A stretch of DNA of 64,000 nt, from sequence record phage_1. One strand, written 5' to 3'. Made by a program: the position numbers and the translations under genes. The notes beneath the pieces were generated by a model. It was given only the letters and a program-made list of their open reading frames with translations. It was not told the origin of the DNA and searched no databases. This document shows, piece after piece, positions 23,301 through 62,345 of the stretch (position 1 is its first letter; each line of letters begins with the position of its first letter).

Positions 23301-25533
23301 CGAGTGCGATGCTACGCATACTCACGAAATAGTCACCGGAGGTAAGCACAGTACGGAGCAGATAAACCCGCTCGTTGCAAACGATCAAATCGTTTGTTGA
23401 TGGATCAACAACCCATGGAGCGGTTGTAACTGACACCGGCCCGTTACCATTTCGGTAATCGCCCAACTGAACTTTAACAACACGATGATGTTTTGCATGG
23501 TCAATGGTGCCGTCAAAGATGACCAGGTAGTACGCACCGTCACTGCCTAAGCAGATCATTGCATCTGTACCGGTAATCACAATAGCAACCAGATTCACCC
23601 CAGGATACGCCGACATTCCAGCGGGTCGATAACGTACGGACGTCTGCTGCATATTTTCCAGCGTATTGCTTGGCGACACATCAGCATAGGCGTAATAGAT
23701 AGCCCAGTCACCTGGTGGATTCCCGTTAGAACCATTACGGAGCGAGTAAACCTTACCAGACTCGTAACGCGCCAAACCTTTCTGCCAGGTTTGGTTTTTG
23801 GTATACCCTTCGTAGTTCCCCTGGACAGGTATAGGCAAGAAGTTATTGTTGCCGTACGATGATCCGCCGACAGTCCATGCGGGCAACAGCGTAGCAATCT
23901 TGTCATTCAGTGTGTCAATCTTTTGTTCAAGCAAGAAGCCCTGACGCGAAGTGACCATCTTATCCGAGGTAGTGTCGATTGCATCCCACAGTTTAGCCAA
24001 ACCTGTAACAGACGTGGATGCGTACGGCACGTTATCGAGATCTGCAATGGTGTGGGTGTGCGTTGTAAGCGCTTTGCCTGATAGCACGGTGCGCAACGCA
24101 TTAGTAACCGGTTTCTCCAGCGGCCCGGTATTGTTCATCTTCTCAATACCGAAATCTGCCGCGGTTAAGGTCAGATGCATCTGCCCGTTTGAATCTAATA
24201 CAAACCCTTTACCATTGACTGTATACGTGTCGTCCACATATCCGTCGAGTTTGTTCTTCAAGTCAGTAACAGCTTTTTGGGAAATCGCTGTGGANGCCGC
24301 AGCGGACGCCGAAAGGTTAGTAATCGCAAACAAACCCTGCACAGTTGTGGTTGCTGCAGGCAGCTCCGCATTCATGTAAACTTTGTTTGTTTCTTTACCA
24401 GAGCCGTAAATCTTCAACGTGTCGCTGGACTTGAAGTAGGCGTTTGCTGGAAGTATCTTCACCGAGGTCAAGTACATCTTAACCATATCCGGTGTAACGA
24501 GATACACGCTGTTATACACAGGTGCAAGCACACCTGCATCATAAGCGCCCCACTTGTCACCTGCTTTACCCGAGTGAACCCAAAGCGTGTTCAGACCAGC
24601 ACTGAACTCCGTAGCGATACCCGGTTCGTTGTTATCCCGGTCAGCTTTTAATACCAGCGGTTTTGTCGAGGTGATAATGAACTTCTCACCCTTCATGCTG
24701 ATAACGTGACCAGACGTTGTTTGGAACGTAATCGCGTCGTTATTCAGAACACGCATACGGCCCAGTAAATCGCCCAGGGTATTATCCAGAAGCATGTCAA
24801 CGTGTTTCTGTTGGATGCCACTGGTAGACATTAACGTCACTAACTCTGCCAGTGTACGTCCAAACGCTTTAGTCGCATCCACGGCCTTACCGAGCACAGG
24901 GAGTGCGCCAATGTCACCGCAGGTGTAACCATGTGCATTTTTAATCAGGTGGTGTTGATACATTTCGTCATCAAACACCTGTTTACCGTTCTGATAAATC
25001 AAATCGGTAACTTCGGCAAATGCCTCATCCAGTTCGTGGGCGCGCTCTAAAATACCCAGACGGATATCTTCCAACGCCTTTACGATTTCATCGCGAAGAA
25101 TCGCTTCTTCGAGATCTTTTGGCGGGTCGATTGGCGAGATAATCGGTGGATATTTCATCAGCTCAGACCAATCGCAGTTGCGCGGGTCTTTCATATCCGT
25201 CTTAACCAGATACTTGCCGATTTCAGAAGCAGGGATGCGGTACTGTCGACCAACCGACAACAACTCGTATTCTACCTCTGTGGCGTTCAGCAGCATTATG
25301 CTGCCGTATATTGCATCGTTCTCAGCCTCGGCTAATTCCTGGAAGTAATGTCCTAAGAAATAATCAAGACCTTCTATTAACTTGCGTTTGGTTCCGGTTA
25401 TTTTATCGGTAACGGTTAACGTTAACCCGATGCGATAGAACGGTGCTTCGACGGGAATGACCGTCGAATAACGGTTCGGGTAAGTAGCGGTACTGAGGGT
25501 ACCGTTAAACTGCGCCGCATCTTCTCTCGGCAT
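20350..25533 (-). CDS. Giant tail fibre / baseplate-attached protein (about 1727 aa)
   Basis: H..KNAHG.T motif, ATTTVQGL and ASTSVTGL fibre repeats, LTAADFGIEKMNNT..KPV motif; AGGAG SD before ATG 25533. Confidence 0.7.
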   Translation of the reverse strand: MPREDAAQFNGTLSTATYPNRYSTVIPVEAPFYRIGLTLTVTDKITGTKRKLIEGLDYFLGHYFQELAEAENDAIYGSIMLLNATEVEYELLSVGRQYRIPASEIGKYLVKTDMKDPRNCDWSELMKYPPIISPIDPPKDLEEAILRDEIVKALEDIRLGILERAHELDEAFAEVTDLIYQNGKQVFDDEMYQHHLIKNAHGYTCGDIGALPVLGKAVDATKAFGRTLAELVTLMSTSGIQQKHVDMLLDNTLGDLLGRMRVLNNDAITFQTTSGHVISMKGEKFIITSTKPLVLKADRDNNEPGIATEFSAGLNTLWVHSGKAGDKWGAYDAGVLAPVYNSVYLVTPDMVKMYLTSVKILPANAYFKSSDTLKIYGSGKETNKVYMNAELPAATTTVQGLFAITNLSASAAXSTAISQKAVTDLKNKLDGYVDDTYTVNGKGFVLDSNGQMHLTLTAADFGIEKMNNTGPLEKPVTNALRTVLSGKALTTHTHTIADLDNVPYASTSVTGLAKLWDAIDTTSDKMVTSRQGFLLEQKIDTLNDKIATLLPAWTVGGSSYGNNNFLPIPVQGNYEGYTKNQTWQKGLARYESGKVYSLRNGSNGNPPGDWAIYYAYADVSPSNTLENMQQTSVRYRPAGMSAYPGVNLVAIVITGTDAMICLGSDGAYYLVIFDGTIDHAKHHRVVKVQLGDYRNGNGPVSVTTAPWVVDPSTNDLIVCNERVYLLRTVLTSGDYFVSMRSIALDELNLGGSNTFVADVLTGGMLTSGDNIYLRQGQXRSDTDVLVAPVTQIYADASAKWNSATKFVHGPECNHAIGVDGLNFRVGLTPTVWFASTTGQTINFKQWVSSFVVDCSSMTITLEGADRFPIVADLTTVRYNGGAEIGIPSRKWGEGQANNRTFATSQDKYIVSQGHAGDRDLMPYVTITTLDDGVSWYEYLSCDYNFTARSFSAVMLNQGRGSIYELGMAYPLTLGANSRLIWLSQPRTRLAIEVEFDPNTTYSGKAGYGPTNNRRVVDSTTYENLSQMCHIVTPASPGTELNGWYCTGPETFPYHNVSGTFTIHADRLTLSQAEWDKMKQMIIDGAPAGAANGYASEFILAANNAGKALFSIWFIGIGTATPLTLAQVACTRTVNNVNLLDIYYFTLKPTISNGQVTFPAAILALFDFYNNLDYGLNYATLGEITGGKTRRPGQPTLVSVDGTQFGLYLPHTLTLRQIGDLGALNYGVGLTLSNGTWTRSSAPHGIGRMAPSHTPVSPAYLAHRDQVMLHNSSLDYVYCGGIAMSSSDFVAAPNFSGPTESVVIAXVETAEGWLVYVTEEVDLRFGSSTYKLPTWYIDLSAAFPTNHQNRTFYLHAKVENGTPKYVMDVIQHPDTETELYIGYVKTGSSRVVETNVEHAKRLGAVKQLLEHAAVENKHDVEVGRDAATGRLAPLRKEAMGPLSIDATKGYLDSQLLYTVSDAQRRGKAMVSKRFEGLKTLPAFTQANKSGAFWKHPTTIATVTADENGEAASLGMEWVGIPTPAFSPTSRTMMVVVQSKFVVPGTPGVETTFNVHVAPWEAVDGFFYNVEAEGTDVNIDENPEVLLPSPHTVHHKQHSLPAGVPCTFTFAAVKSSSALETXNQXICSWLFTDAGGLPITTDLSDSKIQILPQPGETHGTPVVLNSRSYTFTNVAGAIPVVTTGAQGLFPPPIVSWEGDDLTLTIAHDWVNERGRQQPDIIQVNLMFRT

Positions 25534-25554
25534 TGCAAACACTCCTAATCTGTA

Positions 25555-25595
25555 ATAAAACGGAGACCGCCCTCCCAATAACGGAAGGGCGGTTT
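25555..25595 (-). terminator. Internal terminator/attenuator between two giant fibre genes
   Basis: Imperfect ACCGCC..GGCGGT stem followed by T-run on minus strand. Confidence 0.5.
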
Positions 25596-25628
25596 ACCTA
25601 CGGACTACCCGCCCGTAGGCAGTCCGTC

Positions 25629-28600
25629 CTAAGAGGCCCACTCACCCGAGTTGTTGCCTTCGTTTCTACGTTCAGTATCCAACGTTTGTAAAATCCAATC
25701 CCATGTCCTGGTGGGGATGTGGAATGGATTACGCTTCTCAATGAGAATCGTCTCGCCACCCGTGCGAAGTTCCACCGGTGTCGTTTCAGTAATCACGAAC
25801 ATCGGATTACCACTACTACCCACACCGTTAATAGTGAACTTCGCTTGTAGCGGCGGCACAGAACCTTCCGGAGGCACGAACACGATGTGAATTGGCTGCA
25901 TCGGTTTCGTGCGGGCAAGAGTCCCAGATATCTGAACAGCTGTTGTCGATGCACTGAAAGGTATAACATTACCCGGAATTTTCTCACTACCCACGACGAT
26001 ATATCCAGGGTAGTTAGAGAGCATTGTCCCATTTACCGACACAAAACGCTCAGTTTGAGTTGGGCGATAAGCCCGCATAAAGCCGTACTTCCATTCACCA
26101 CCGTTAGACGTATAGTCTGCAGGAGCCGACTCAAGTAGCGGAGCACCACGTTTCTGCAGCCCTTTATAAAACGGCGCTGGGAGTTTACCGTTCGGTGCAA
26201 GTTCCGGATAACCCTCACTTGCAGCAGACATCGTGATGTATTCCGTAACCGGGTGATCAACGTTATCTCCAAATGACGCAAAAGGTACCGTTGTTACTGT
26301 CATCTCCTCGTGGCCGGAAGACTGTCTATCTGGTGTCCTTTCAATATACGACTCAAACAGTGAACGTAAATAATGGAAACGATTTATATCCACATCTGAG
26401 ATGATCGGCTGCATCAAACCGTGGTTAATAGTCACGTTGTCTCCAGTTTCAATACCGGAAACGTGGATGGCTAGCGCCCCACCTTTAAAGTAATCGATCG
26501 CATCAAACGGAATGTCGTATTCCATTTCGTAAACCTGCACCAGCGGATTGGCTATCAACTTAGAAACCATTGAGATGCGCAGTACCTGCGTATCAACAAT
26601 GTATCGATAACGTACAAGCCAACGATCTCCAAGCGGCGCAAGCTCACTATCGGTATGAACCGAAAGAAAATCTAAACACTCGGTAGATTGGCTCGTCAGG
26701 TTTTTAATTACCCTCGGATTTTCAAGCACCTTATTTGTAACACTGCCCTGCGTGGTCGAGATGATGCCTCCAGTTGCTTGGTTATAAGGAGACGTGATGA
26801 AGCCACAATTCAATTCTGGACGATTGCCACTCCATCTCAGTACCCTAGTCTTGCTTTTATCATCTGCAGACGGGGCCATGAAGTTTAATGTGATATCGCG
26901 ATCGCGAACAGTTTGCGCTTCCGACAAATCAACATCGACCACCACAGAACCTTCAAACGTCGCCATCCCTTTTTCTTTCGGGTTGCTTGGTGTAAACCAG
27001 CAGTACGGTGATGCGCTTTCTGTGGAGACAACCGCTCCAACAAACACTAGGCTTGAAATGGTGCTATCAAATTTATAATCGAATAACCCTCGGTCTAATC
27101 GAATATAGTGGTTACCAGAAACTGGACTATTAGGGTACGCATAAAGCCACTGTTTAGGCAACGGATCGACTTTGTTTAGCGGTAACATTTTTGGGTTATC
27201 CGTCAACGACCAGTCGGCATTACTCACTCCGTGTGCCAGACGTGTTTCGAAGTGCCGTTTAAGTTCGGACGCCATGCCAAAATCAAACGTCGTTTCAAAC
27301 TCGTAAGTCGTACCTGCAACCAATCCCGTCTCTGGTACATCAATATGTCCGATATAGCCGCGTTCCAAGTTAATACCTTCCGTGTCCACAATAGGTTCGG
27401 CGCGCGAATATAACGCATCGGTTATCATGTTCACATAGAGGTAATGCCTTAAACCATTCGGCGTCTTAACAAACTCCTGCAGGCGGGCAACTTTGGTGTT
27501 TTTATCCGAGGCCCCAACCGCAAAGTCACCGTCGTAAATTGTGAAACGAATTGCGGCTGCTTTAGCGCTATCGTTACACTCGGCACGGAATGCTAAGCAG
27601 TGTTGCTTCCACCCCTCCTTGACAGTCGCCTCCAGATACCCCGCTTCTGTAATACCCGCACCGATAATTTCACCGTCCAGATAAACAGAAACAGCACCAC
27701 CGCCACGAACCCAAATCCGCAGCTTACCAGAGTCGCAACGAACCCACGTTTTCGCCAAGAGGTTAACGACTGACAAATCACCCATTCCGGTTGTCGTTAA
27801 ACCAATCTGCGCACCGTAGTTCGTTTCCGGGACGGCAACCTCAAACCCACTAAAATCAATACCGGCACCGGTATTAATTACCGCGTTCTGCCACGTTCTT
27901 TCCATACGGTTATCTGGAGAGAACCACTGGAACATCGGTGTGGTTTGCAGGTCTATCGAACCAGATACCGTCCCCTCTTTACGTGCGCCATTTAACAGAT
28001 AGAAATAATTCAAATCCGTTATGGCGAGTGTGGTACGTGCTGACCCCACAGTCCAAGTCTTACCACGCACAGCGGCAAAATCGGTCACGGAATCCTCTTT
28101 CGCGTTTGCTAGCGCAGCTGCAACTACGTCTAAACGTTTTGACAAATCGTTCAGAACGTTCGGGGTAACGCCGCGATTACCCGACAAGCCGTTTAGGTTG
28201 GTAGAATATCGAGCGATACCGGGAACTGTTTGAGAAGCCGTTGGGATCTGTAAATCGGCGAAGTTGTGATGATGGCCTTTATCGCTAAGACCGGTAACTG
28301 CTTCTGCCAACGCATCAGAAAGTGGTTTATCGACGTCAGCTGTGTTATCAGCCAAGTCCAGACCCAAATCCTTTTTCGTTAGCGTTCGGCTACCAGTGTC
28401 CATCGGCTGGTTATTCAGCAGCGTTGTCTTCCTGACGTACGAAGACAGATCACCCTCGTACGGTAAGAGCGAAGCTGGGGTGGCTGCTTGTCCTTTGACT
28501 ACATCGCTCGGCTTATCAGTCAGCGTCACAACGCCGGGTTCAGAGGTCGTGGCGGGTTTGGCTGTAACCTTCCCGGTGACGGGATCGGCTTTTGACCCTT

Positions 28601-29759
28601 TGCCCGTGAAAGTAATACCGTTCACCCCGCTAATGTACAGTTTGTTGTCATCCGGGTCAACGGTACCGCCGCCGGTACCAGGGTCTTGTTGATAGCCCAT
28701 GAGAGCGGTGGTGGTCAGCAACGTTGTTCCGTTAAGTGTCAGCTTATCCATCCCCAAGGCACTGCCGGTTGACTCAATACGTAACGTATTGATGCCTGCT
28801 TTCCACTCCATAAACCGGACGGTTCCAGTAGTGTCAGCATACCCACACGCCAGCACGACAGAGCCATTAGATTTAAGAGTGAATGCCTCAGCAGAGAACA
28901 CAATTTCGGATTCGCCAGCAGGAGAACGGAACAGGGCACGAGTACCAGATATCGTCGCGTTAAACACCCCTTTGGATTCTTTCGATACCCATTTAGAAAT
29001 GTACTTGTCGATATCCGATTGTTGCAGGCCCAGTGCACGGACCTCGCTGGTTAATTGACGCAACGTCTTTCCATACGCCAGGAAAGTATCTGGCGTTTTC
29101 AGGTTGACAGGATGCGCCCCGGCCTGCGCCGCGGTAGTCCCATGAGGGTTAGTGGACGCAATGTGTCCGGGGTAGTTAAATGTGGCGATTTCAGTTCCTA
29201 AGCCCAGAACCGTATCTTTCAGCTCGGTAAGCTTTTCACGAATCTGCTCGTTGGCCGCCCCGGCATCTAACTCCACATCATGCACTGCAGAGGCAACATA
29301 CTTTTTATTCAGCATGTCTGACCAAGCTACCGCTGCGGGGGTGGCTGGGTACAGGGAAGGTCGATTACCTAAAAGCAGCCAATCTGCAGCCGTTGGATTG
29401 TTGAGAGCCTTAATTAACTCATCCAACATCTCAATCAGACCACTGTAAAACGTACCCCCGAGCATCTGGCCTTCAAAGACCACTGCACCACGCAGTTTAG
29501 GGTTAATAAGATGCACCCCACAGAACACCGGGGTCGTCACCGAGTCGTCCAACGGCGTTAAAGCATACTCCAGCTCATAGTCCGTCCCGCGGGTAAGCGG
29601 TATGGTCGAGCCGGCGAGCATTACCACCAATCCTTCGAAAAATGGGCGATGATCTAGCATCACCACCCGATCGTTAGGATTGTCGGAGTCGATGATACGT
29701 TCCTCGATGAAGTGACACTCGGGATTTACACCCCGAGGATCGTAAGGATACGTTTTCAT
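25629..29759 (-). CDS. Giant tail fibre paralog (1376 aa)
   Basis: YPYDPRG N-term; HIASTNPHGTT; ATTSEPGV and ASQTVPGI repeats; LTKKDLGLDLADNTADVDKPLS. Confidence 0.7.
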   Translation of the reverse strand: MKTYPYDPRGVNPECHFIEERIIDSDNPNDRVVMLDHRPFFEGLVVMLAGSTIPLTRGTDYELEYALTPLDDSVTTPVFCGVHLINPKLRGAVVFEGQMLGGTFYSGLIEMLDELIKALNNPTAADWLLLGNRPSLYPATPAAVAWSDMLNKKYVASAVHDVELDAGAANEQIREKLTELKDTVLGLGTEIATFNYPGHIASTNPHGTTAAQAGAHPVNLKTPDTFLAYGKTLRQLTSEVRALGLQQSDIDKYISKWVSKESKGVFNATISGTRALFRSPAGESEIVFSAEAFTLKSNGSVVLACGYADTTGTVRFMEWKAGINTLRIESTGSALGMDKLTLNGTTLLTTTALMGYQQDPGTGGGTVDPDDNKLYISGVNGITFTGKGSKADPVTGKVTAKPATTSEPGVVTLTDKPSDVVKGQAATPASLLPYEGDLSSYVRKTTLLNNQPMDTGSRTLTKKDLGLDLADNTADVDKPLSDALAEAVTGLSDKGHHHNFADLQIPTASQTVPGIARYSTNLNGLSGNRGVTPNVLNDLSKRLDVVAAALANAKEDSVTDFAAVRGKTWTVGSARTTLAITDLNYFYLLNGARKEGTVSGSIDLQTTPMFQWFSPDNRMERTWQNAVINTGAGIDFSGFEVAVPETNYGAQIGLTTTGMGDLSVVNLLAKTWVRCDSGKLRIWVRGGGAVSVYLDGEIIGAGITEAGYLEATVKEGWKQHCLAFRAECNDSAKAAAIRFTIYDGDFAVGASDKNTKVARLQEFVKTPNGLRHYLYVNMITDALYSRAEPIVDTEGINLERGYIGHIDVPETGLVAGTTYEFETTFDFGMASELKRHFETRLAHGVSNADWSLTDNPKMLPLNKVDPLPKQWLYAYPNSPVSGNHYIRLDRGLFDYKFDSTISSLVFVGAVVSTESASPYCWFTPSNPKEKGMATFEGSVVVDVDLSEAQTVRDRDITLNFMAPSADDKSKTRVLRWSGNRPELNCGFITSPYNQATGGIISTTQGSVTNKVLENPRVIKNLTSQSTECLDFLSVHTDSELAPLGDRWLVRYRYIVDTQVLRISMVSKLIANPLVQVYEMEYDIPFDAIDYFKGGALAIHVSGIETGDNVTINHGLMQPIISDVDINRFHYLRSLFESYIERTPDRQSSGHEEMTVTTVPFASFGDNVDHPVTEYITMSAASEGYPELAPNGKLPAPFYKGLQKRGAPLLESAPADYTSNGGEWKYGFMRAYRPTQTERFVSVNGTMLSNYPGYIVVGSEKIPGNVIPFSASTTAVQISGTLARTKPMQPIHIVFVPPEGSVPPLQAKFTINGVGSSGNPMFVITETTPVELRTGGETILIEKRNPFHIPTRTWDWILQTLDTERRNEGNNSGEWAS

Positions 29760-29771
29760 TCAAAAATCTCC

Positions 29772-32700
29772 TTAATCACGAATAATAAGTGTTCGACCTG
29801 ACGTGTTTTTCGGATTGAACGTCATCATCTTGGATGGGTGCGCCGCCGGTGGAATTTTACCTGTATCCACTGGTCGGAACGAACTGTATGAATAGTTGCA
29901 CATCGCGCTGTTCATCTCATTAATCGTTGAACCTGCATCCACCACGCCAGTAAAGAATCTTGCGCGGTTTAAGCCGGAATAGTTAATCGCATAGTCAAGG
30001 AACGTGGCGTAATAACGATTCTTTGTCGGCATCGTGTTCAGGTTAGCGTAAGTCAAACGCGCTTCTGTGTCGGAACTAAACAAACCACCCACGCCGTGAT
30101 AAATCGGCGTACTCGGATCGGTAATCAGTTTCGTCAAGTCGATATAGTCAGGACGGAGACGGGTAGACAAATCCTCAGTCCACGACTCGCCGGTCGACTG
30201 CAAGGTGTATTTCAGCGTCTTTGTTGTCGCGGTTAGCGTCAGCTCAAAGTTGATCGTTTTGGAATCGATGTTAATCGTTCCCACGAACGAAATACCGTCC
30301 GCTGTTCGCGCGTGGCTGAAACGCACCGATGGATTAAGTGCCGTCCAGTCATGGCCGGAACCAGTGACGCCGTTCAAGCCAATAACAACCTGTGCAGCAC
30401 GTCCGTAGTTAACCGCGATTCCCGCATACGTGCTCACGCCGCCTGGAGTGGTAATACGCCCTGCGGTGCGTGCGACGAGTACAGAAATACGGTGCATGAA
30501 CGTGGCCGAGTGATGGCAACACCCAATTACCGTTTCTAGCACACTGTCCGCTGTTGCGGTTAAAGGTGTCCACGTCGCGGTAATGCCGTTATTCTGGAAC
30601 ATCGGGAATGTGTTGTGGACAAAACGATAATNGGTTACAGATAAACTGGTTGTTTTAAACGTCCATTTATCAGCAGCCGGATCGTAGTCCGCTTTCAACA
30701 TAGGCGTATAGCTGCTAGCCTGCGCGTAACGCCAATCGGCATCTATACGTTTTGTACCCGGTGCACCCGTGGACCACACAGGCCCGCCCGTACCGTAAGT
30801 AAATCCGAAATCAGCTTGCGTCATGCCCCGACGAATATGGGCGTTATCATCCTCGATATGCTCGCCTAATTCACGGAACTCACCTAAACGCGTCACGTTG
30901 CGGATTTCTACAAAAACCACACCGGTTTCACTGGTGACGATGGAACCTATTTTGGTCATCGTCTCAGTTTCTGCCGTGTTTGGATTTTCGTAGATAATGT
31001 ACTTGCCATCATNGCCCGCCGCGTCAACATACACGCCAAACTCGGCATCTTCGTGCGTCGCTGGGAATAGCTCAGCCAAGTTAAATGTGGAGAGAGGTAC
31101 TTTGTACTCGCGACCAACGAAATAATCGTTCGCTTTAATAGTAACCATCCAGTCGGTGTAAGTGATGCCGTTTTCAATGATATCCGTGCCGGGTAAACCG
31201 TAACGAATAATGTTGATTGAAGCACCAGAGTCGACTGTCTTCGCAACCTTCTCTATCTCTGTGATGGCGTCCGCCTGTCGGATGACCTCAGCGCCGTCTA
31301 ATGCCAGCGTGGCATCGTCAACCGCGGTGCCGAACTGTACTAAACCGAACTCCGTCGTTGTTGCACGCTTAATCCCGAGCGCATCAGGAGTGTGTGTGTG
31401 ACCGACGACTGCATACTTGTCCAGCTCAGCTCGTTGGAGCGGGGAAATCGGCAATTGCACATCTGGGATGTTCTGTACGTTCGATAAGCCGAAGTTAGTT
31501 TTATCGATGTAAATGGAACNCGTCAGCGGCATGTCGTTGATGTACGATTTAACGGCAACCAACTTGCCCGTAAACTGCTGATCCAATTTCTTGATGAGTG
31601 CCGGCGTTGCGGCCAAGTCCTCACGATCACCGAATTCAGTAGCCAACAAACGGACAGCCATCAGGCCAAGGTCATCGGACTCCGGTGGAACAAAAGTACA
31701 AATGAACGGAACAGACTGAATACCGTTACCGTTAATGGTTACAGTAGCTGTGGATGTTCCGTAAAACAGTCCATCACCACCCGACTCGTTACCCGGCAGG
31801 TACGGCCCGACCGTAGTAGGGTCCAACAGTTTCTTACCGTTGAACTCCAATCCACGGGAATCCGGATAAAGGATGAGTTGGTTAGCCCCACCTTGCCATG
31901 TAATCGGATTGTTCCCGGCGTTAACGGTTTGCGAATCGCGTCCAATAAAACGNATAACCCTCGGGTCAACCGTAAATTGTGCACCCACGCCTTCAGACTC
32001 ATCGGTACCCACTGCCGACGTTATTGAAGTCAGGCCAGGCTTCATGCCGAACGTGCCGTTGATAGACTGTGCAGCCGTCGGTAAACGTAAAAGCTTATTC
32101 GCCAGCGCTGACAGTTTCGGCAACAGATTGTTAACGTAATCTGTCAGCTGCGGTTGCGTTTTTCCGTATACCAGTGTCGCGTCCGAAGCAATACCGTTAT
32201 TCTCCAAAGCACGGATTGCGCCCCACGAATCGCGATGCGGGTTATCCTTGCGCGGCACGTGTGTGTGTGCCGGTGCATCACGGTACAGTTTATCGACAAT
32301 CTGGTGATATTTTACCAGCAGCTGGTACACGTCATTGTTAACGTCAGGTGACGGTGCGCCTGGTAATGAACGAATCTGGACGTAATCGTTCTCACCCGCC
32401 CACCAGTTTAGGTTGACGCCCGATTTAAACTTCAACCATTTAGCGACATCAGTTTTCTGATACCCTGGTGCAAATTCGCTCGGCGGGTTGTCAACGTTAA
32501 AGCTGTAGTTAACGGTTTGCTTGCTTGTTTTAACGGTGATGTCGTAAATGCCGTTACCTTCGCGTCTGACCACGCTAAACTCAACCTCACCCGCCAACTC
32601 GGCATCGGTCAGGCCAGTCGTCAACGTATAGCTGTAATTAGACGAACCGGAACCAATCGCTGTCGTTAAGGTAAGATAAATCGCGCGTTGCTTCAACTGA

Positions 32701-60219: not shown

Positions 60220-60759
60220 ATGCAAATCGTAATTGACTTCGCTCTGTCGGAGTCGAGACGTCAGCTAGATGAAATTCTGTTAGGATTAAAACGTGACGTG
60301 GAATTTGAACTTCACGATGCGTTGGCCGTCCACGAAAATCGTTTGTCTGACGAAATAGGTTCGGGTGTAGATGTGGCTATCTGTGACACTGGGGATATGG
60401 TAAATCAGCTTATTGAACGTATGTTCACGCGGCTGCGTAACATTCTGAACTATCCCCATCGTTTTGAACTGGTAGAAGGGACGGACCAAATCACCGACTT
60501 ATTGAGTGAAGCCTTTGATAAGGTTGGTGAATCTCTGGCGGGGTTACATCAAGAGAACCTGGGCGAGACATATGTTGCTGTGGTCATTAACGGGCAAACG
60601 TCGAACGTTACGGATACGGTAACATGGTCCGATATCGTTGACCAGCCAATCATTGACAAAATCACCAAGCTGTATCNTGAGGCGGAGATGAAGGTGCTGG
60701 CTATCTGTCGTCGCGAACTGCTCTATCTCGGCGAGAAATATGGGAAACCTGTTGAATGA
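60220..60759 (+). CDS. Hypothetical acidic helical protein
   Basis: AAGGAG SD. Confidence 0.55.
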   Translation: MQIVIDFALSESRRQLDEILLGLKRDVEFELHDALAVHENRLSDEIGSGVDVAICDTGDMVNQLIERMFTRLRNILNYPHRFELVEGTDQITDLLSEAFDKVGESLAGLHQENLGETYVAVVINGQTSNVTDTVTWSDIVDQPIIDKITKLYXEAEMKVLAICRRELLYLGEKYGKPVE

Positions 60760-61298
60760 AAATATTCATTGATTTACTCGATGACGAATTTCGTGAAATA
60801 TTTCCAGCGGCGTTGTTCGAGTTTAAGCGTAAGTGTGAAGACTATCTGATACCGAAGAATATCGATCGTCAACACCTCGCTGGACTTATCTCTGCGGCGT
60901 ACGTCAATATCGCGGTAAATGAAGTTCATCAACTCGCGCAACGTATTGCGTGTTTCGAATACAACGACGAAGACATTGAAGACGGCTTCCTGCAGTCTAA
61001 GATGGGTCGCTTCTCACTCGAACTCAAGACCGATGAGGTTATTGATAAGGTCGGTAAAGCCTTTGATGAAATGAAGGACATCGAAATGATGATTAAGATG
61101 TCTGGACCGGAAGCAGGCCCATTGAAAGAAGCGTGGGAACATCTCAACCGCGACGAGTATAAAGAGATGTACATGGGTGAGTTCACCACCATGCTACGTC
61201 ACCTCGAAGCACAGGTCTGGGAGCATATCGTTTCACGTCTGAAAGAAATACTGATTGTGATTGAGCCAATGCAGCCACTCGCTATTAGTAAATTCTAG
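60756..61298 (+). CDS. Hypothetical acidic helical protein
   Basis: ATGA-coupled ORF. Confidence 0.55.
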   Translation: MKIFIDLLDDEFREIFPAALFEFKRKCEDYLIPKNIDRQHLAGLISAAYVNIAVNEVHQLAQRIACFEYNDEDIEDGFLQSKMGRFSLELKTDEVIDKVGKAFDEMKDIEMMIKMSGPEAGPLKEAWEHLNRDEYKEMYMGEFTTMLRHLEAQVWEHIVSRLKEILIVIEPMQPLAISKF

Positions 61299-61303
61299 TT
61301 AAA

Positions 61304-61337
61304 CGGACACTCTTCGGGGTGTCCGTAGTTTTATTTT
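61304..61337 (+). terminator. Rho-independent terminator
   Basis: CGGACACTC-TTCG-GGGTGTCCG (one G-U pair) plus T-rich tail. Confidence 0.7.
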
Positions 61338-61366
61338 AATCGACCATTAATCTAAAGGAGTATTAA

Positions 61367-62290
61367 ATGGACAGCTTTCTTTTTGATTTGGCAGAATCGG
61401 TAAATGTAGATGTAATCGGTATGCGCGAATCCCCGAGTAATTTCTTAAACGGTCTTACTAAAATCGACGAACGTGTGAAATCCAGAAGTGGAGATCCCGC
61501 CATCATCGAGCAATACGCAATAGCCCATTGTGGCGAGATAGGCCAGCACTTTATACCGATTGAGGCGTTCCTAAAGAACTGCTTCGCCGAAGAATGCACC
61601 GCAGACTTCCTGTCTCTTGCCTACGGCTGGCGATACGGGGGTATCCAAATGGAATTTGATCTTAATATTTTTGAACAAGTTCTACTTGGCGACGTTCTCA
61701 CTGAGATACCACGCAGCTGGATAGACAAGATTCCCGGTTGGGCCGTCTCCTTTTCAGTGTGCTATCGCGCTAAAGATATCGGTATCCAAGAAAAGACTTA
61801 CGTTTTCGGTCGGCGAATGTTTAAAGGGAAAGATTGTTTAACAATGATGATTTTTGGAAAACGTATCGAGGGGGAAACCTTTGAAATCGTGGACGTGGGT
61901 GACGGCTTTGTATCCTTGCGTGTGGCGGAAACTGGTACGCCGGCCAATGAGAAAACGTTACGCATTGTCGGCGCTACCATGTTTACATTCTCACTGATCC
62001 CGCACAACCCTACACCCGTCAAACTGAGACAATTAACTGGAAAGAAACGTATCGCCAATTACCACATTGAACCAAAATCTAAACCGACTGTCCTCTCCAC
62101 CGTAAAAGCACAAAGCGAGTATCTTGAAGAATTTGATACTGATACGGAGAAAAGAACACAAGGTAGCAGATGTGCGCATATGCGTCGTGCACACTGGTGT
62201 ACTTACTGGCTCGGTCCACGTGACGGGAATCGGACAAAGATTTTGAAATGGATACCGCCGACATTTGTCAACGGTTCTAAATGCAAATAA
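61367..62290 (+). CDS. AcrVA2/FinQ-like protein
   Basis: C-term HMRRAHWCTYWLG..KWIPPTFVNG and N-half YGWRY..FD..IF..EIP..IPGWAV resemble recalled AcrVA2 motifs; similar length (307 aa). Confidence 0.6.
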   Translation: MDSFLFDLAESVNVDVIGMRESPSNFLNGLTKIDERVKSRSGDPAIIEQYAIAHCGEIGQHFIPIEAFLKNCFAEECTADFLSLAYGWRYGGIQMEFDLNIFEQVLLGDVLTEIPRSWIDKIPGWAVSFSVCYRAKDIGIQEKTYVFGRRMFKGKDCLTMMIFGKRIEGETFEIVDVGDGFVSLRVAETGTPANEKTLRIVGATMFTFSLIPHNPTPVKLRQLTGKKRIANYHIEPKSKPTVLSTVKAQSEYLEEFDTDTEKRTQGSRCAHMRRAHWCTYWLGPRDGNRTKILKWIPPTFVNGSKCK

Positions 62291-62345
62291 AATAAAGCCT
62301 ACCCACTCCCGTAAGGGGAGTGGGTACTGCTTACTTNNTNTTTAT
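62285..62345. terminator. Bidirectional terminator (family copy 5)
   Basis: TACCCACTCCC/GGGAGTGGGTA stem between convergent genes. Confidence 0.8.

What the first reader, a model, noticed from the sequence alone, without database searches (positions are those of the whole stretch)
61367..62290. AcrVA2/FinQ-like protein in a probable nucleus-forming jumbo phage
Seen: C-terminal HMRRAHWCTYWLG...KWIPPTFVNG and N-half WRY..FD....P.....P.W.V. Recalled from memory and unverified: AcrVA2 ends HIRRGHWHGYWQG...WQPAVFVN and has WRNTLGIYQLD...TP...LPDWCV; it is related to plasmid FinQ and is reported to block Cas12a biogenesis rather than activity. Inference: since phiKZ-like phages generally shield DNA from Cas12, this homolog probably silences a different host defence or conjugation protein. 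It sits in its own unit between two terminators.
Basis: partly seen in the sequence, partly recalled or inferred. Interest (0 to 1): 0.75.

Follow-up and report, generated by a model that had tools for sequence, protein, structure and literature searches.

The report
AcrVA2/FinQ-family gene in jumbo phage
This 307-residue phage gene is a genuine full-length relative of the anti-CRISPR AcrVA2 and the plasmid protein FinQ, sitting in a swappable slot of a nucleus-forming jumbo phage, so it most likely shuts off production of some still unknown host or rival-element protein rather than Cas12a.

Summary
The ORF (61367-62290, +, 307 aa) is real, has a good ribosome-binding site and lies between two terminator-like hairpins. 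The window is Escherichia phage vB_EcoM_Lh1B, a Seoulvirus (SPN3US-like, chimallin-encoding jumbo phage). Homology to AcrVA2/FinQ is established over the whole length, not only the C-terminal motif. A 63-sequence family profile hits PDB AcrVA2 (7ci1) at E=3.4e-41 over residues 9-303. An AlphaFold model (pLDDT 90.8) finds only AcrVA2 in the PDB (E=2.4e-9). FinQ matches the profile at 99.9% probability. The precomputed Pfam hit is PF26125 'AcrVA2-like'. All five residues shown experimentally to matter in AcrVA2 are conserved (W88, D98, H271, R273, H276). New here is the locus behaviour. The target and activity are untested. The most likely function is AcrVA2-style, translation-coupled silencing of a non-Cas12a protein. 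One caveat: the Lh1B record looks like a reference-guided consensus, but the gene exists in many independent assemblies. Verdict: a correctly identified new member of a known family, of moderate interest.

The parts
61303..61326 (+). Upstream terminator-like hairpin (10-bp stem, 6 G-C pairs, 4-nt loop) followed by a T-rich run. It ends the upstream gp213-like gene and is part of the cassette that SPN3US lacks.
61327..61366 (+). Short leader with the ribosome-binding site AAGGAG (61355-61360), 6 nt before the ATG. No recognisable promoter. The leader is shared at the DNA level with the SaP7 cassette.
61367..62290 (+). CDS for the 307-aa AcrVA2/FinQ-family protein (GenBank UGO35939.1, annotated 'hypothetical protein'; Pfam PF26125 AcrVA2-like; PHROG 6160).
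61367..61726 (+). Residues 1-120: mostly helical N-terminal region. Residues 1-80 are the least conserved part of the family and differ most between alleles. Contains W88 and D98, the equivalents of AcrVA2 W79 and D89, and the invariant P115.
61727..61996 (+). Residues 121-210: central antiparallel beta-sheet domain (strands 126-186) plus helix 195-209. Contains the invariant P123.
62087..62287 (+). Residues 241-307: C-terminal small beta domain, the best conserved part of the family.
62177..62194 (+). Codons for H271-M-R273-R-A-H276, the H-x-R-x-x-H motif. It is invariant in 63 of 63 family members and aligns with AcrVA2 H286/R288/H291, which are required for Cas12a mRNA and protein downregulation but not for binding.
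62300..62326 (.). Downstream hairpin (11-bp stem, 7 G-C pairs) with T-rich runs on both sides. It is shared with the convergent gp214-like gene and present unchanged in SPN3US. Masked N positions follow it and were set aside.
61299..62283 (+). Extent of the roughly 990-bp segment present here but absent from SPN3US and most Seoulviruses, where the gp213 and gp214 orthologues are about 62 bp apart. Against SaP7 the non-homologous segment is 61368-62341.

Best explanation
The gene encodes a full-length member of the AcrVA2/FinQ superfamily (Pfam PF26125, AcrVA2-like), carried as an accessory, exchangeable cassette in a variable slot of Seoul-like nucleus-forming jumbo phages. By analogy with AcrVA2, the variable N-terminal and central domains would recognise a specific protein, probably its nascent chain on the ribosome in the host cytoplasm. 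The invariant C-terminal H-x-R-x-x-H domain would then trigger loss of that protein's mRNA, so the target is never made. The target is most likely a host (E. coli or Salmonella) protein made during infection, such as a defence factor that acts outside the phage nucleus, and not Cas12a. SHOWN: homology over the whole length, conservation of all five functionally tested AcrVA2 residues, cassette-like presence/absence, and allele replacement at one locus. INFERRED: the translation-coupled mechanism, the division of labour between the domains, and the nature of the target.
For: Homology: the profile of 63 family members hits AcrVA2 7ci1_A at E=3.4e-41 over residues 9-303 vs 6-318. Every member of that profile had been retrieved by the phage-only profile at E<=3e-11 from 1.84 billion proteins, with 1,764 hits at E<=1e-3. 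With the AF2 model (pLDDT 90.8, pTM 0.86), Foldseek vs PDB finds only AcrVA2 (7ci2_A E=2.4e-9, 7ci1_B E=1.1e-8, 328-338 columns, TM 0.47-0.49; next hit E=0.2). FinQ WP_023063753.1 matches the profile by hhalign at 99.9%, E=6.7e-34. The precomputed Pfam hit is PF26125:AcrVA2-like. Functional residues: AcrVA2 H286/R288/H291 are needed for downregulation and W79/D89 contribute (Marino et al., bioRxiv 10.1101/2022.11.29.518452). They align with H271/R273/H276 (63/63 conserved) and with W88 (57/63) and D98 (41/63). Domain pattern: family conservation is lowest at residues 1-80 and 181-200 and highest at 261-300. Between alleles, identity is 33% over residues 1-60 and 50-53% over residues 246-307. 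Marino et al. likewise note that AcrVA2 and FinQ resemble each other in the C-terminal domain and diverge towards the N-terminus. Accessory nature: the slot is empty in SPN3US. SaP7 has a 40%-identical allele with flanks 93% and 96% identical, and DNA homology stops at the start codon. Asesino has a 44%-identical gene in the same slot. An Enterobacter Seoul-like genome has two tandem family members there. Non-Cas12a target: homologues are typically found where Cas12a is absent, including on megaphages. That E. coli and Salmonella carry type I rather than type V-A CRISPR systems is established knowledge, not tested here.
Against: No experiment or expression data exist for this protein or any jumbo-phage homologue. 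Identity to AcrVA2 is only about 15%, and the global TM-score (0.47-0.49, rmsd about 9 A) is moderate, so domain arrangement may differ. How AcrVA2 itself destroys mRNA is unknown, so the mechanism is borrowed from a partly understood model. Blocking biogenesis does nothing against proteins already present when a lytic phage arrives, which makes a role against constitutive defences less obvious. No promoter was found, so timing of expression is unknown. The neighbouring genes are all of unknown function and give no guilt-by-association clue. The Lh1B record itself may be a reference-guided consensus, so physical presence of the cassette in that particular isolate is unverified.
Confidence: 0.55

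Rival explanations
1. FinQ-like warfare between mobile elements. The protein silences genes of a co-resident conjugative plasmid or a competing phage rather than a host defence, which would be useful during the long-term persistent (carrier-state) infections reported for Seoul-like phages.
For: FinQ is a family member. It inhibits F-plasmid transfer and was reported to lower tra mRNA levels. FinQ is itself a presence/absence insert in IncI1 plasmids, which mirrors the cassette here. 84% of 299 Seoul-like genomes come from bacterial assemblies and are interpreted as persistent infections. The exact protein is found on contigs of about 240 kb in NCBI bacterial-isolate assemblies. A biogenesis inhibitor suits long coexistence better than a brief lytic cycle, as argued for AcrVA2 in a prophage.
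Against: No link to any plasmid or rival phage gene was found. Pairwise similarity to FinQ is marginal and C-terminal only (E=9e-3), so there is no reason to expect the same target. This differs from the best explanation only in the identity of the target.
Confidence: 0.2
2. Same fold, different biochemistry. The conserved His/Arg/His C-terminal domain acts in a way not coupled to translation of a specific target, for example as a general RNA-binding or RNA-cleaving module or a transcription-termination factor.
For: The AcrVA2 effector step is unknown. From my own knowledge (not checked with the tools here), older work on FinQ proposed an effect on tra transcription. Two histidines and an arginine, invariant in 63/63 sequences, are a composition typical of metal-independent ribonuclease sites; this rests on general enzymology and is an inference.
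Against: Marino et al. found no resemblance to known enzymes. Foldseek against the PDB returns no nuclease or other enzyme below E=0.1. The strongly variable N-terminal part argues for a specific recognition function.
Confidence: 0.15
3. A true anti-CRISPR against Cas12a, with the same function as AcrVA2 of Moraxella bovoculi.
For: Same family, and the same five functional residues are conserved.
Against: Identity is only about 15%, and the N-terminal recognition region is not conserved. The hosts are E. coli and Salmonella, where type V-A systems are not known (established knowledge). Homologues are typically found without Cas12a. Nucleus-forming phages already exclude DNA-targeting nucleases.
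Confidence: 0.03
4. A regulator of the phage's own gene expression, or a functionless passenger cassette.
For: No target is known. The gene is dispensable, since most Seoulviruses lack it.
Against: A core regulator would not be absent from near-identical phages. A decaying passenger would not keep an intact 307-aa frame with every family-invariant residue, be maintained as the exact same protein in 140 index blocks of independent assemblies, or be duplicated in tandem.
Confidence: 0.05

Closest known systems
AcrVA2 (Moraxella bovoculi prophage; PDB 7ci1/7ci2; Pfam PF26125 AcrVA2-like)
   Same: Length is about 310-320 aa. The profile alignment is full length (E=3.4e-41), and AcrVA2 is the only significant fold match. 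The H-x-R-x-x-H motif and the W...D pair at the same 10-residue spacing are conserved. Both are encoded on a mobile element as a stand-alone accessory gene.
   Different: Identity is about 15% and the global TM-score only 0.47-0.49. The N-terminal 80 residues are not alignable by pairwise methods. This gene sits in a virulent or persistent nucleus-forming jumbo phage of Enterobacteriaceae rather than a temperate Moraxella prophage, and no AcrVA1-like partner gene is evident nearby. The host lacks Cas12a, so the target must differ.
FinQ (fertility inhibition protein of IncI1 and F-like plasmids)
   Same: Same superfamily (hhalign 99.9%, E=6.7e-34 over residues 103-307). The host range is the same (E. 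coli, Salmonella). FinQ also behaves as a presence/absence insert in an otherwise conserved backbone, and it is reported to lower mRNA of its target operon.
   Different: Pairwise similarity is limited to the C-terminal 56 residues (38% identity, E=9e-3). FinQ is plasmid-borne next to trbA, whereas this gene is in a phage. The target of FinQ (F tra genes) has no obvious relevance to a lytic jumbo phage.
Homologues in other jumbo phages (Asesino gp235, SaP7 ULF48428.1, ChrisDB, Dickeya JA13, RisingSun, Yoloswag, Special G gp231; PHROG 6160)
   Same: They belong to the same PHROG (7e-40). Asesino and SaP7 have the same genomic slot and the same length (307-308 aa), and every hit lies in a record of 235-307 kb. 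Structural matches in BFVD reach TM 0.78.
   Different: Identity is only 21-44%. All are annotated 'hypothetical', apart from 'putative protein FinQ' and one evidently mistaken 'putative mycothiosynthase'. None has been studied.

Membership tests
AcrVA2-like superfamily (Pfam PF26125; AcrVA2 + FinQ) | Significant sequence-profile match to AcrVA2 over most of the length | tested here: met
   The 63-sequence profile vs PDB hits 7ci1_A at E=3.4e-41, 145 bits, positions 9-303 vs 6-318. The single sequence alone gives only E=0.004 and is C-terminal.
AcrVA2-like superfamily (Pfam PF26125; AcrVA2 + FinQ) | Hit to the curated Pfam model PF26125 | tested here: inconclusive
   Precomputed annotation lists PF26125 (named 'AcrVA2-like', unmarked, i.e. 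E<=1e-5) for this exact protein and all 8 close homologues. My own hmmscan against the local Pfam copy returned no family for it or for any of 63 relatives, most likely because that copy lacks the model, so I could not reproduce the hit.
AcrVA2-like superfamily (Pfam PF26125; AcrVA2 + FinQ) | Three-domain fold of the AcrVA2 crystal structure | tested here: met
   Foldseek vs PDB finds only 7ci2_A (E=2.4e-9) and 7ci1_B (E=1.1e-8), probability 1.00, 328-338 aligned columns. TM is a moderate 0.47-0.49, and the next hit is at E=0.2 (first model).
AcrVA2-like superfamily (Pfam PF26125; AcrVA2 + FinQ) | Conserved C-terminal H-x-R-x-x-H (AcrVA2 H286, R288, H291), required for downregulation | tested here: met
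   H271, R273 and H276 are aligned to those residues and invariant in 63/63 members. The functional data come from Marino et al..
AcrVA2-like superfamily (Pfam PF26125; AcrVA2 + FinQ) | Conserved N-terminal Trp and Asp (AcrVA2 W79, D89) | tested here: met
   W88 (57/63 W) and D98 (41/63 D) have the same 10-residue spacing and are aligned; counts are.
AcrVA2-like superfamily (Pfam PF26125; AcrVA2 + FinQ) | Translation-dependent downregulation of a specific target mRNA | not testable with these tools
   This needs expression measurements; none exist for this protein.
AcrVA2 proper (type V-A anti-CRISPR) | Inhibits Cas12a by recognising the Cas12a N-terminal peptide | not testable with these tools
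   Indirect evidence is against it: identity is about 15% with a divergent N-terminal region, and homologues typically occur without Cas12a.
FinQ (plasmid fertility inhibition) | Sequence relationship to FinQ | tested here: met
   hhalign of the family profile vs FinQ WP_023063753.1 gives 99.9%, E=6.7e-34, 216 columns. Pairwise tblastn gives only E=9e-3.
FinQ (plasmid fertility inhibition) | Encoded on an IncI1 or F-like conjugative plasmid, next to the transfer genes | tested here: not met
   The gene is in a 240-kb phage genome between phage genes of unknown function, upstream of a UvsX-like gene. It is therefore a relative of FinQ, not FinQ.
FinQ (plasmid fertility inhibition) | Inhibits F-plasmid conjugation | not testable with these tools
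   No data.

The most novel reading that the evidence does not exclude
The gp213/gp214 slot of Seoul-like and Erskine-like nucleus-forming phages is a hypervariable counter-defence locus. It holds zero, one or two AcrVA2-like genes whose recognition domains have diversified (40% identity between phages whose flanks are 93-96% identical). Each would co-translationally silence a different cytoplasmic host or rival-element protein. This would give phages whose DNA is already shielded a way to stop defences that act on mRNA, translation or the early infection stage, and might support the persistent carrier state reported for these phages. Comparing alleles would then offer a natural panel for learning how this family reads nascent peptides.
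Probability: 0.3. Interest if true: 0.7.

Novelty: new member of a known kind. Interest (0 to 1): 0.4.

Why it matters
AcrVA2 is so far the only bacterial example of a protein that recognises a nascent polypeptide and destroys its mRNA. Its discoverers proposed that the roughly 1,800 homologues hit other targets, but none is known. Jumbo-phage members living in E. coli and Salmonella, which are tractable hosts without Cas12a, are a convenient place to look for a second target. That holds especially here, because nature provides near-isogenic phages with the slot empty, with allele A, or with a 40%-identical allele B. For nucleus-forming phages it would also point to which cytoplasmic host functions still threaten them. 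That said, the family assignment already exists in Pfam, and megaphage homologues were mentioned in the AcrVA2 paper, so the identification is confirmation rather than discovery.

Tried and rejected
(1) The local Pfam, NCBIfam and PADLOC scans returned nothing. Only PHROG 6160, of unknown function, matched.

(2) The first AF2 model, from 8 sequences, had a poor C-terminal domain (pLDDT below 50 over residues 262-307). It was replaced by the 63-sequence model.

(3) Promoter search: the sigma-70 scan gave nothing meaningful upstream. The conserved stretch TTTAATCGAC is not enriched (10 matches vs 5.4 expected; 5 of 100 shuffles do as well). A k-mer enrichment scan upstream of ORFs found only T-runs. 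The promoter and timing of expression remain unknown.

(4) 'Recent lateral transfer' read from 0 differences in 1,018 nt between the window and EC001 was rejected as unsafe. The window aligns to EC001 over 64 kb with 1,755 substitutions and no indel, whereas EC001 vs JN03 shows 23 gap openings for 1,493 substitutions. The Lh1B record therefore looks like a reference-guided consensus in which the cassette could be reference fill. A weaker version of the signal survives in 11 independent assemblies: gene 0.22% vs flank 1.57% pairwise divergence. That comparison is biased, because 8 of the loci were chosen for having an identical protein.

(5) Surveying slot occupancy in IMG/VR with the upstream neighbour as anchor returned only SPN3US itself.

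(6) The cassette DNA is not found in complete E. coli RefSeq genomes.

(7) Base composition does not mark the cassette as foreign: GC is 45.8% vs 48.0% for the window, at the 18th percentile.

(8) The neighbouring genes are all of unknown function, and the two upstream genes are not clear paralogues.

(9) Circularity of the profile hit was checked. P0032, the member with AcrVA2-like coordinates, is not AcrVA2 itself (E=1.6e-6, C-terminal only).

N positions in the window were set aside in all comparisons and were not filled.
Full report
OBSERVATION. It has an AAGGAG ribosome-binding site 6 nt upstream. It is bracketed by a terminator-like hairpin with T-run at 61303-61326 and a second, bidirectional-looking hairpin at 62300-62326, which it shares with the convergent downstream gene. 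No promoter could be recognised.

WHERE THE WINDOW COMES FROM. The window is 99.9% identical to Escherichia phage vB_EcoM_Lh1B (OK428535.1, genus Seoulvirus, 240,200 bp), and window coordinate equals record coordinate minus 124,000. The protein is UGO35939.1, annotated 'hypothetical protein'. SPN3US, the type member, encodes a diverged chimallin (gp244) and forms a lattice like the phage nuclear shell (PMC9365700). All 299 'Seoul-like' genomes in a recent survey encode chimallin (bioRxiv 10.1101/2024.12.31.630880). 'Probable nucleus-forming jumbo phage' is therefore justified.

IS IT REALLY AcrVA2/FinQ-LIKE? The finding's own refutation test was similarity confined to the short C-terminal motif with an unrelated fold elsewhere. 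Pairwise evidence is indeed C-terminal only: phmmer against all PDB chains returns one hit, AcrVA2 7ci1_A, at E=0.004 over query residues 254-305. A profile of the 8 close homologues improves this only to E=2.2e-4. Three independent lines then extend the relationship to the whole protein.
- Sequence profiles. The phage-only profile, run exhaustively against 1.84 billion representative proteins, finds 1,764 relatives at E<=1e-3 and 180 at E<=1e-10. Most are 300-350 aa long and many align from about residue 70 to the end. A profile of the query plus 62 of these diverse hits matches AcrVA2 at E=3.4e-41 (145 bits) over profile positions 9-303 and chain residues 6-318 of 323. The member whose coordinates most resembled AcrVA2 is not AcrVA2 itself. 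Because every member had been pulled in by the phage-only profile at E<=3e-11, the chain of inference is sound in any case.
- Fold. An AlphaFold2 model from the 63-sequence alignment is confident (mean pLDDT 90.8, pTM 0.86). Foldseek against the PDB returns only AcrVA2 (7ci2_A E=2.4e-9; 7ci1_B E=1.1e-8; probability 1.00; 328-338 aligned columns), and the next hit is at E=0.2. An earlier, poorer model gave the same answer. The TM-score of 0.47-0.49 is moderate, so domain packing may differ.
- Curated family. The precomputed Pfam annotation for this exact protein is PF26125, named 'AcrVA2-like'. I could not reproduce this with the local Pfam copy, which returns nothing for any of 63 family members, presumably because it lacks the model.
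FinQ is linked as well. Pairwise tblastn reaches finQ-annotated genes on E. coli and Salmonella plasmids only marginally (E=9e-3, residues 247-302). The family profile matches FinQ WP_023063753.1 at 99.9% probability, E=6.7e-34, over query residues 103-307.

FUNCTIONAL RESIDUES. Marino et al. (bioRxiv 10.1101/2022.11.29.518452) showed that the AcrVA2 mutations H286A, R288A and H291A abolish downregulation of Cas12a protein and mRNA while the mutant proteins still bind Cas12a. They also showed that W79A and D89A cause partial loss of function. In the tool-generated alignments these residues correspond to H271, R273 and H276, and to W88 and D98 (the PDB chain numbering is offset by one). Across the 63 diverse members, H271, R273 and H276 are invariant, W88 is W in 57, and D98 is D in 41. 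P115, P123, G283 and W295 are also invariant. The protein thus has every residue currently known to matter for this family.

ANATOMY. The model shows three parts:
- a mostly helical N-terminal region (residues 1-120);
- a central antiparallel sheet (strands 126-186) backed by helix 195-209;
- after a poorly ordered linker, a small C-terminal beta domain (residues 271-301) carrying the H-x-R-x-x-H motif.
Family conservation is lowest at residues 1-80 and 181-200 and highest at 261-300. That agrees with the observation by Marino et al. that AcrVA2 and FinQ resemble each other at the C-terminus and diverge towards the N-terminus.

THE LOCUS IS A VARIABLE SLOT (the main thing added here).
- In SPN3US the orthologous neighbours, gp213 and gp214, are only about 62 bp apart. 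The gene, its upstream hairpin and its leader (about 990 bp, 61299-62283) are missing.
- Of the 37 non-Erwinia records that match this 6-kb region, only four carry a family member: Lh1B, EC001 and JN03 with this allele, and SaP7 with another.
- SaP7, which is filed under the species Seoulvirus SPN3US, has a gene of the same length in the same place that is only 40% identical in protein. Its flanks are 93% and 96% identical in DNA, and DNA homology stops at the start codon (61367) and resumes at 62341.
- Erwinia phage Asesino (Erskinevirus) has a 44%-identical gene in the same slot. The SaP7 allele is closer to Asesino's (52%) than to this one.
- A 222-kb circular 'plasmid' of Enterobacter ludwigii (NZ_CP134650.1) has Seoul-like gene order and is evidently such a phage genome. 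It carries two adjacent family members in the slot (hhalign E=6.6e-42 and 1.2e-30).
- More distant members occur in 76 phage records, every hit shown being in a record of 235-307 kb from Erwinia, Klebsiella, Serratia, Dickeya or Salmonella phages. Eleven viral structures in BFVD match at E<=1e-3.
Presence/absence, allele replacement with cassette-precise breakpoints and tandem duplication are the usual signature of accessory genes engaged in conflict. FinQ itself is a 1,250-bp presence/absence insert in IncI1 plasmids (PMC8004404).

A CAUTION ABOUT THE RECORD. The cassette (61293-62310, 1,018 nt) shows 0 differences between the window and EC001, while the flanks differ by about 3.5%. I do not read this as recent transfer. 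Over the whole 64 kb the window aligns to EC001 with 1,755 substitutions and no indel at all. The two records have the same length and identical gene coordinates. Two independent assemblies, EC001 and JN03, show 23 gap openings for 1,493 substitutions over the same region. The Lh1B record therefore looks like a consensus called on the EC001 reference. Its two long identical runs, the cassette and 25401-29809, could be reference fill. Whether isolate Lh1B physically carries the gene can only be settled from its reads.
The gene itself is not in doubt. The exact protein is indexed in 140 blocks of the public assembly collection, 47 of them with contigs of 0.2-1 Mb, including NCBI bacterial-isolate assemblies, sequencing-run assemblies and a metagenome. 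Every locus read shows the same gene order. Among 11 independent carriers the gene is less diverse than its upstream flank: 9 segregating sites in 924 nt vs 143 in 2,833 nt, and 0.22% vs 1.57% pairwise divergence. This hints that the cassette is younger than the backbones. The comparison is biased, because eight of the loci were selected for an identical protein.

HOW IT MOST LIKELY WORKS. What is shown is family membership, conserved functional residues, a variable N-terminal part with a constant C-terminal part, and accessory-cassette behaviour. What follows is inferred from AcrVA2. The variable domains bind a specific polypeptide, probably as it emerges from the ribosome. The constant H-x-R-x-x-H domain triggers loss of the corresponding mRNA, so the target is never produced. 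Such a protein would work in the cytoplasm, where host and phage mRNAs are translated, which is the compartment a nucleus-forming phage cannot shield.
Cas12a is an implausible target. The hosts are E. coli and Salmonella, identity to AcrVA2 is about 15%, and homologues typically occur without Cas12a. Because blocking biogenesis does not remove pre-existing protein, the target is more likely something made or replenished during infection. Alternatively the gene pays off during the long persistent infections reported for Seoul-like phages, in which case a rival plasmid or phage is an equally good candidate, as with FinQ. I put about 0.55 on 'AcrVA2-style silencing of a non-Cas12a host protein', 0.2 on the rival-element version, 0.15 on a different biochemical activity of the same fold, and little on a true anti-Cas12a role or a functionless passenger.

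NOVELTY AND SCORE. The family is known (Pfam PF26125; Marino et al. mention plasmids and 'megaphages'), and the precomputed annotation already assigns this protein to it. GenBank calls it hypothetical, and JN03 does not annotate it at all. No paper in the library links FinQ to jumbo phages. It is therefore a new member of a known kind. The added value is the description of the slot with empty, single (two alleles) and tandem states in near-isogenic phages of tractable hosts. Interest is 0.4.

Noticed in passing
window 1-64000 (whole window), especially 25401-29809 and 61293-62310: The window (Lh1B record) aligns to EC001 (MN445185.1) ungapped over all 64 kb with 1,755 substitutions and no indel, and both records are exactly 240,200 bp. 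Two independent assemblies, EC001 and JN03, show 23 gap openings for 1,493 substitutions over the same region. The Lh1B record therefore looks like a reference-guided consensus, and its two long identical runs (4,409 nt and 1,018 nt) may be reference fill.
   Followed up: partly
L007 (NZ_CP134650.1, Enterobacter ludwigii 'plasmid unnamed1', 28697-39422): This 222-kb circular, non-mobilizable 'plasmid' has SPN3US-like gene order (exoribonuclease, RNase H, ..., 756-bp reverse gene, UvsX-sized gene). It is evidently a Seoul-like jumbo phage genome in a bacterial assembly, consistent with the reported persistent infections. It carries two tandem AcrVA2-like genes.
   Followed up: partly
window 25401-29809 (4,131-nt gene on the - strand, EC001 MGA_169): A very large gene that is only about 93% identical in most Seoulviruses, against 96-98% for the surrounding backbone, yet 100% identical between the Lh1B and EC001 records. 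Some records name it 'YomR'. It may be a host-range-related structural gene, or just a second reference-filled stretch.
   Followed up: no
L011 (Salmonella phage JN03, MT799840.1 186196-187116): JN03 has the intact gene (99.7% identical protein), but its record leaves it unannotated.
   Followed up: yes
phage records MF459646.1 (RisingSun) and KU886222.1 (Special G): Family members carry inconsistent names: 'putative mycothiosynthase' in RisingSun, which is evidently a misannotation since it matches this fold at E=1.2e-13, and 'putative protein FinQ' in Special G. All the others are 'hypothetical protein'.
   Followed up: partly
window 61367-62290; loci L016-L023: The exact 307-aa protein is indexed in 140 blocks of the public assembly collection, including NCBI bacterial-isolate assemblies (GCA_008107065.1, GCA_039688375.1, GCA_008059975.1), on contigs of about 240 kb. 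The allele is thus much commoner in bacterial sequencing data than among deposited phage isolates, where 3 records carry it.
   Followed up: partly
window 60220-61298: The two genes upstream of the cassette (179 and 180 aa, with overlapping stop and start) are similar in size and belong to separate PHROGs of unknown function. They share only a weak 22-residue similarity (E=0.005), so paralogy is not established.
   Followed up: partly
window 62338-62342 and scattered positions (13 N between 58000 and 64000): Masked N positions fall in the T-rich tail of the downstream terminator and inside neighbouring ORFs, where they appear as X in translations. They were set aside and not filled.
   Followed up: no
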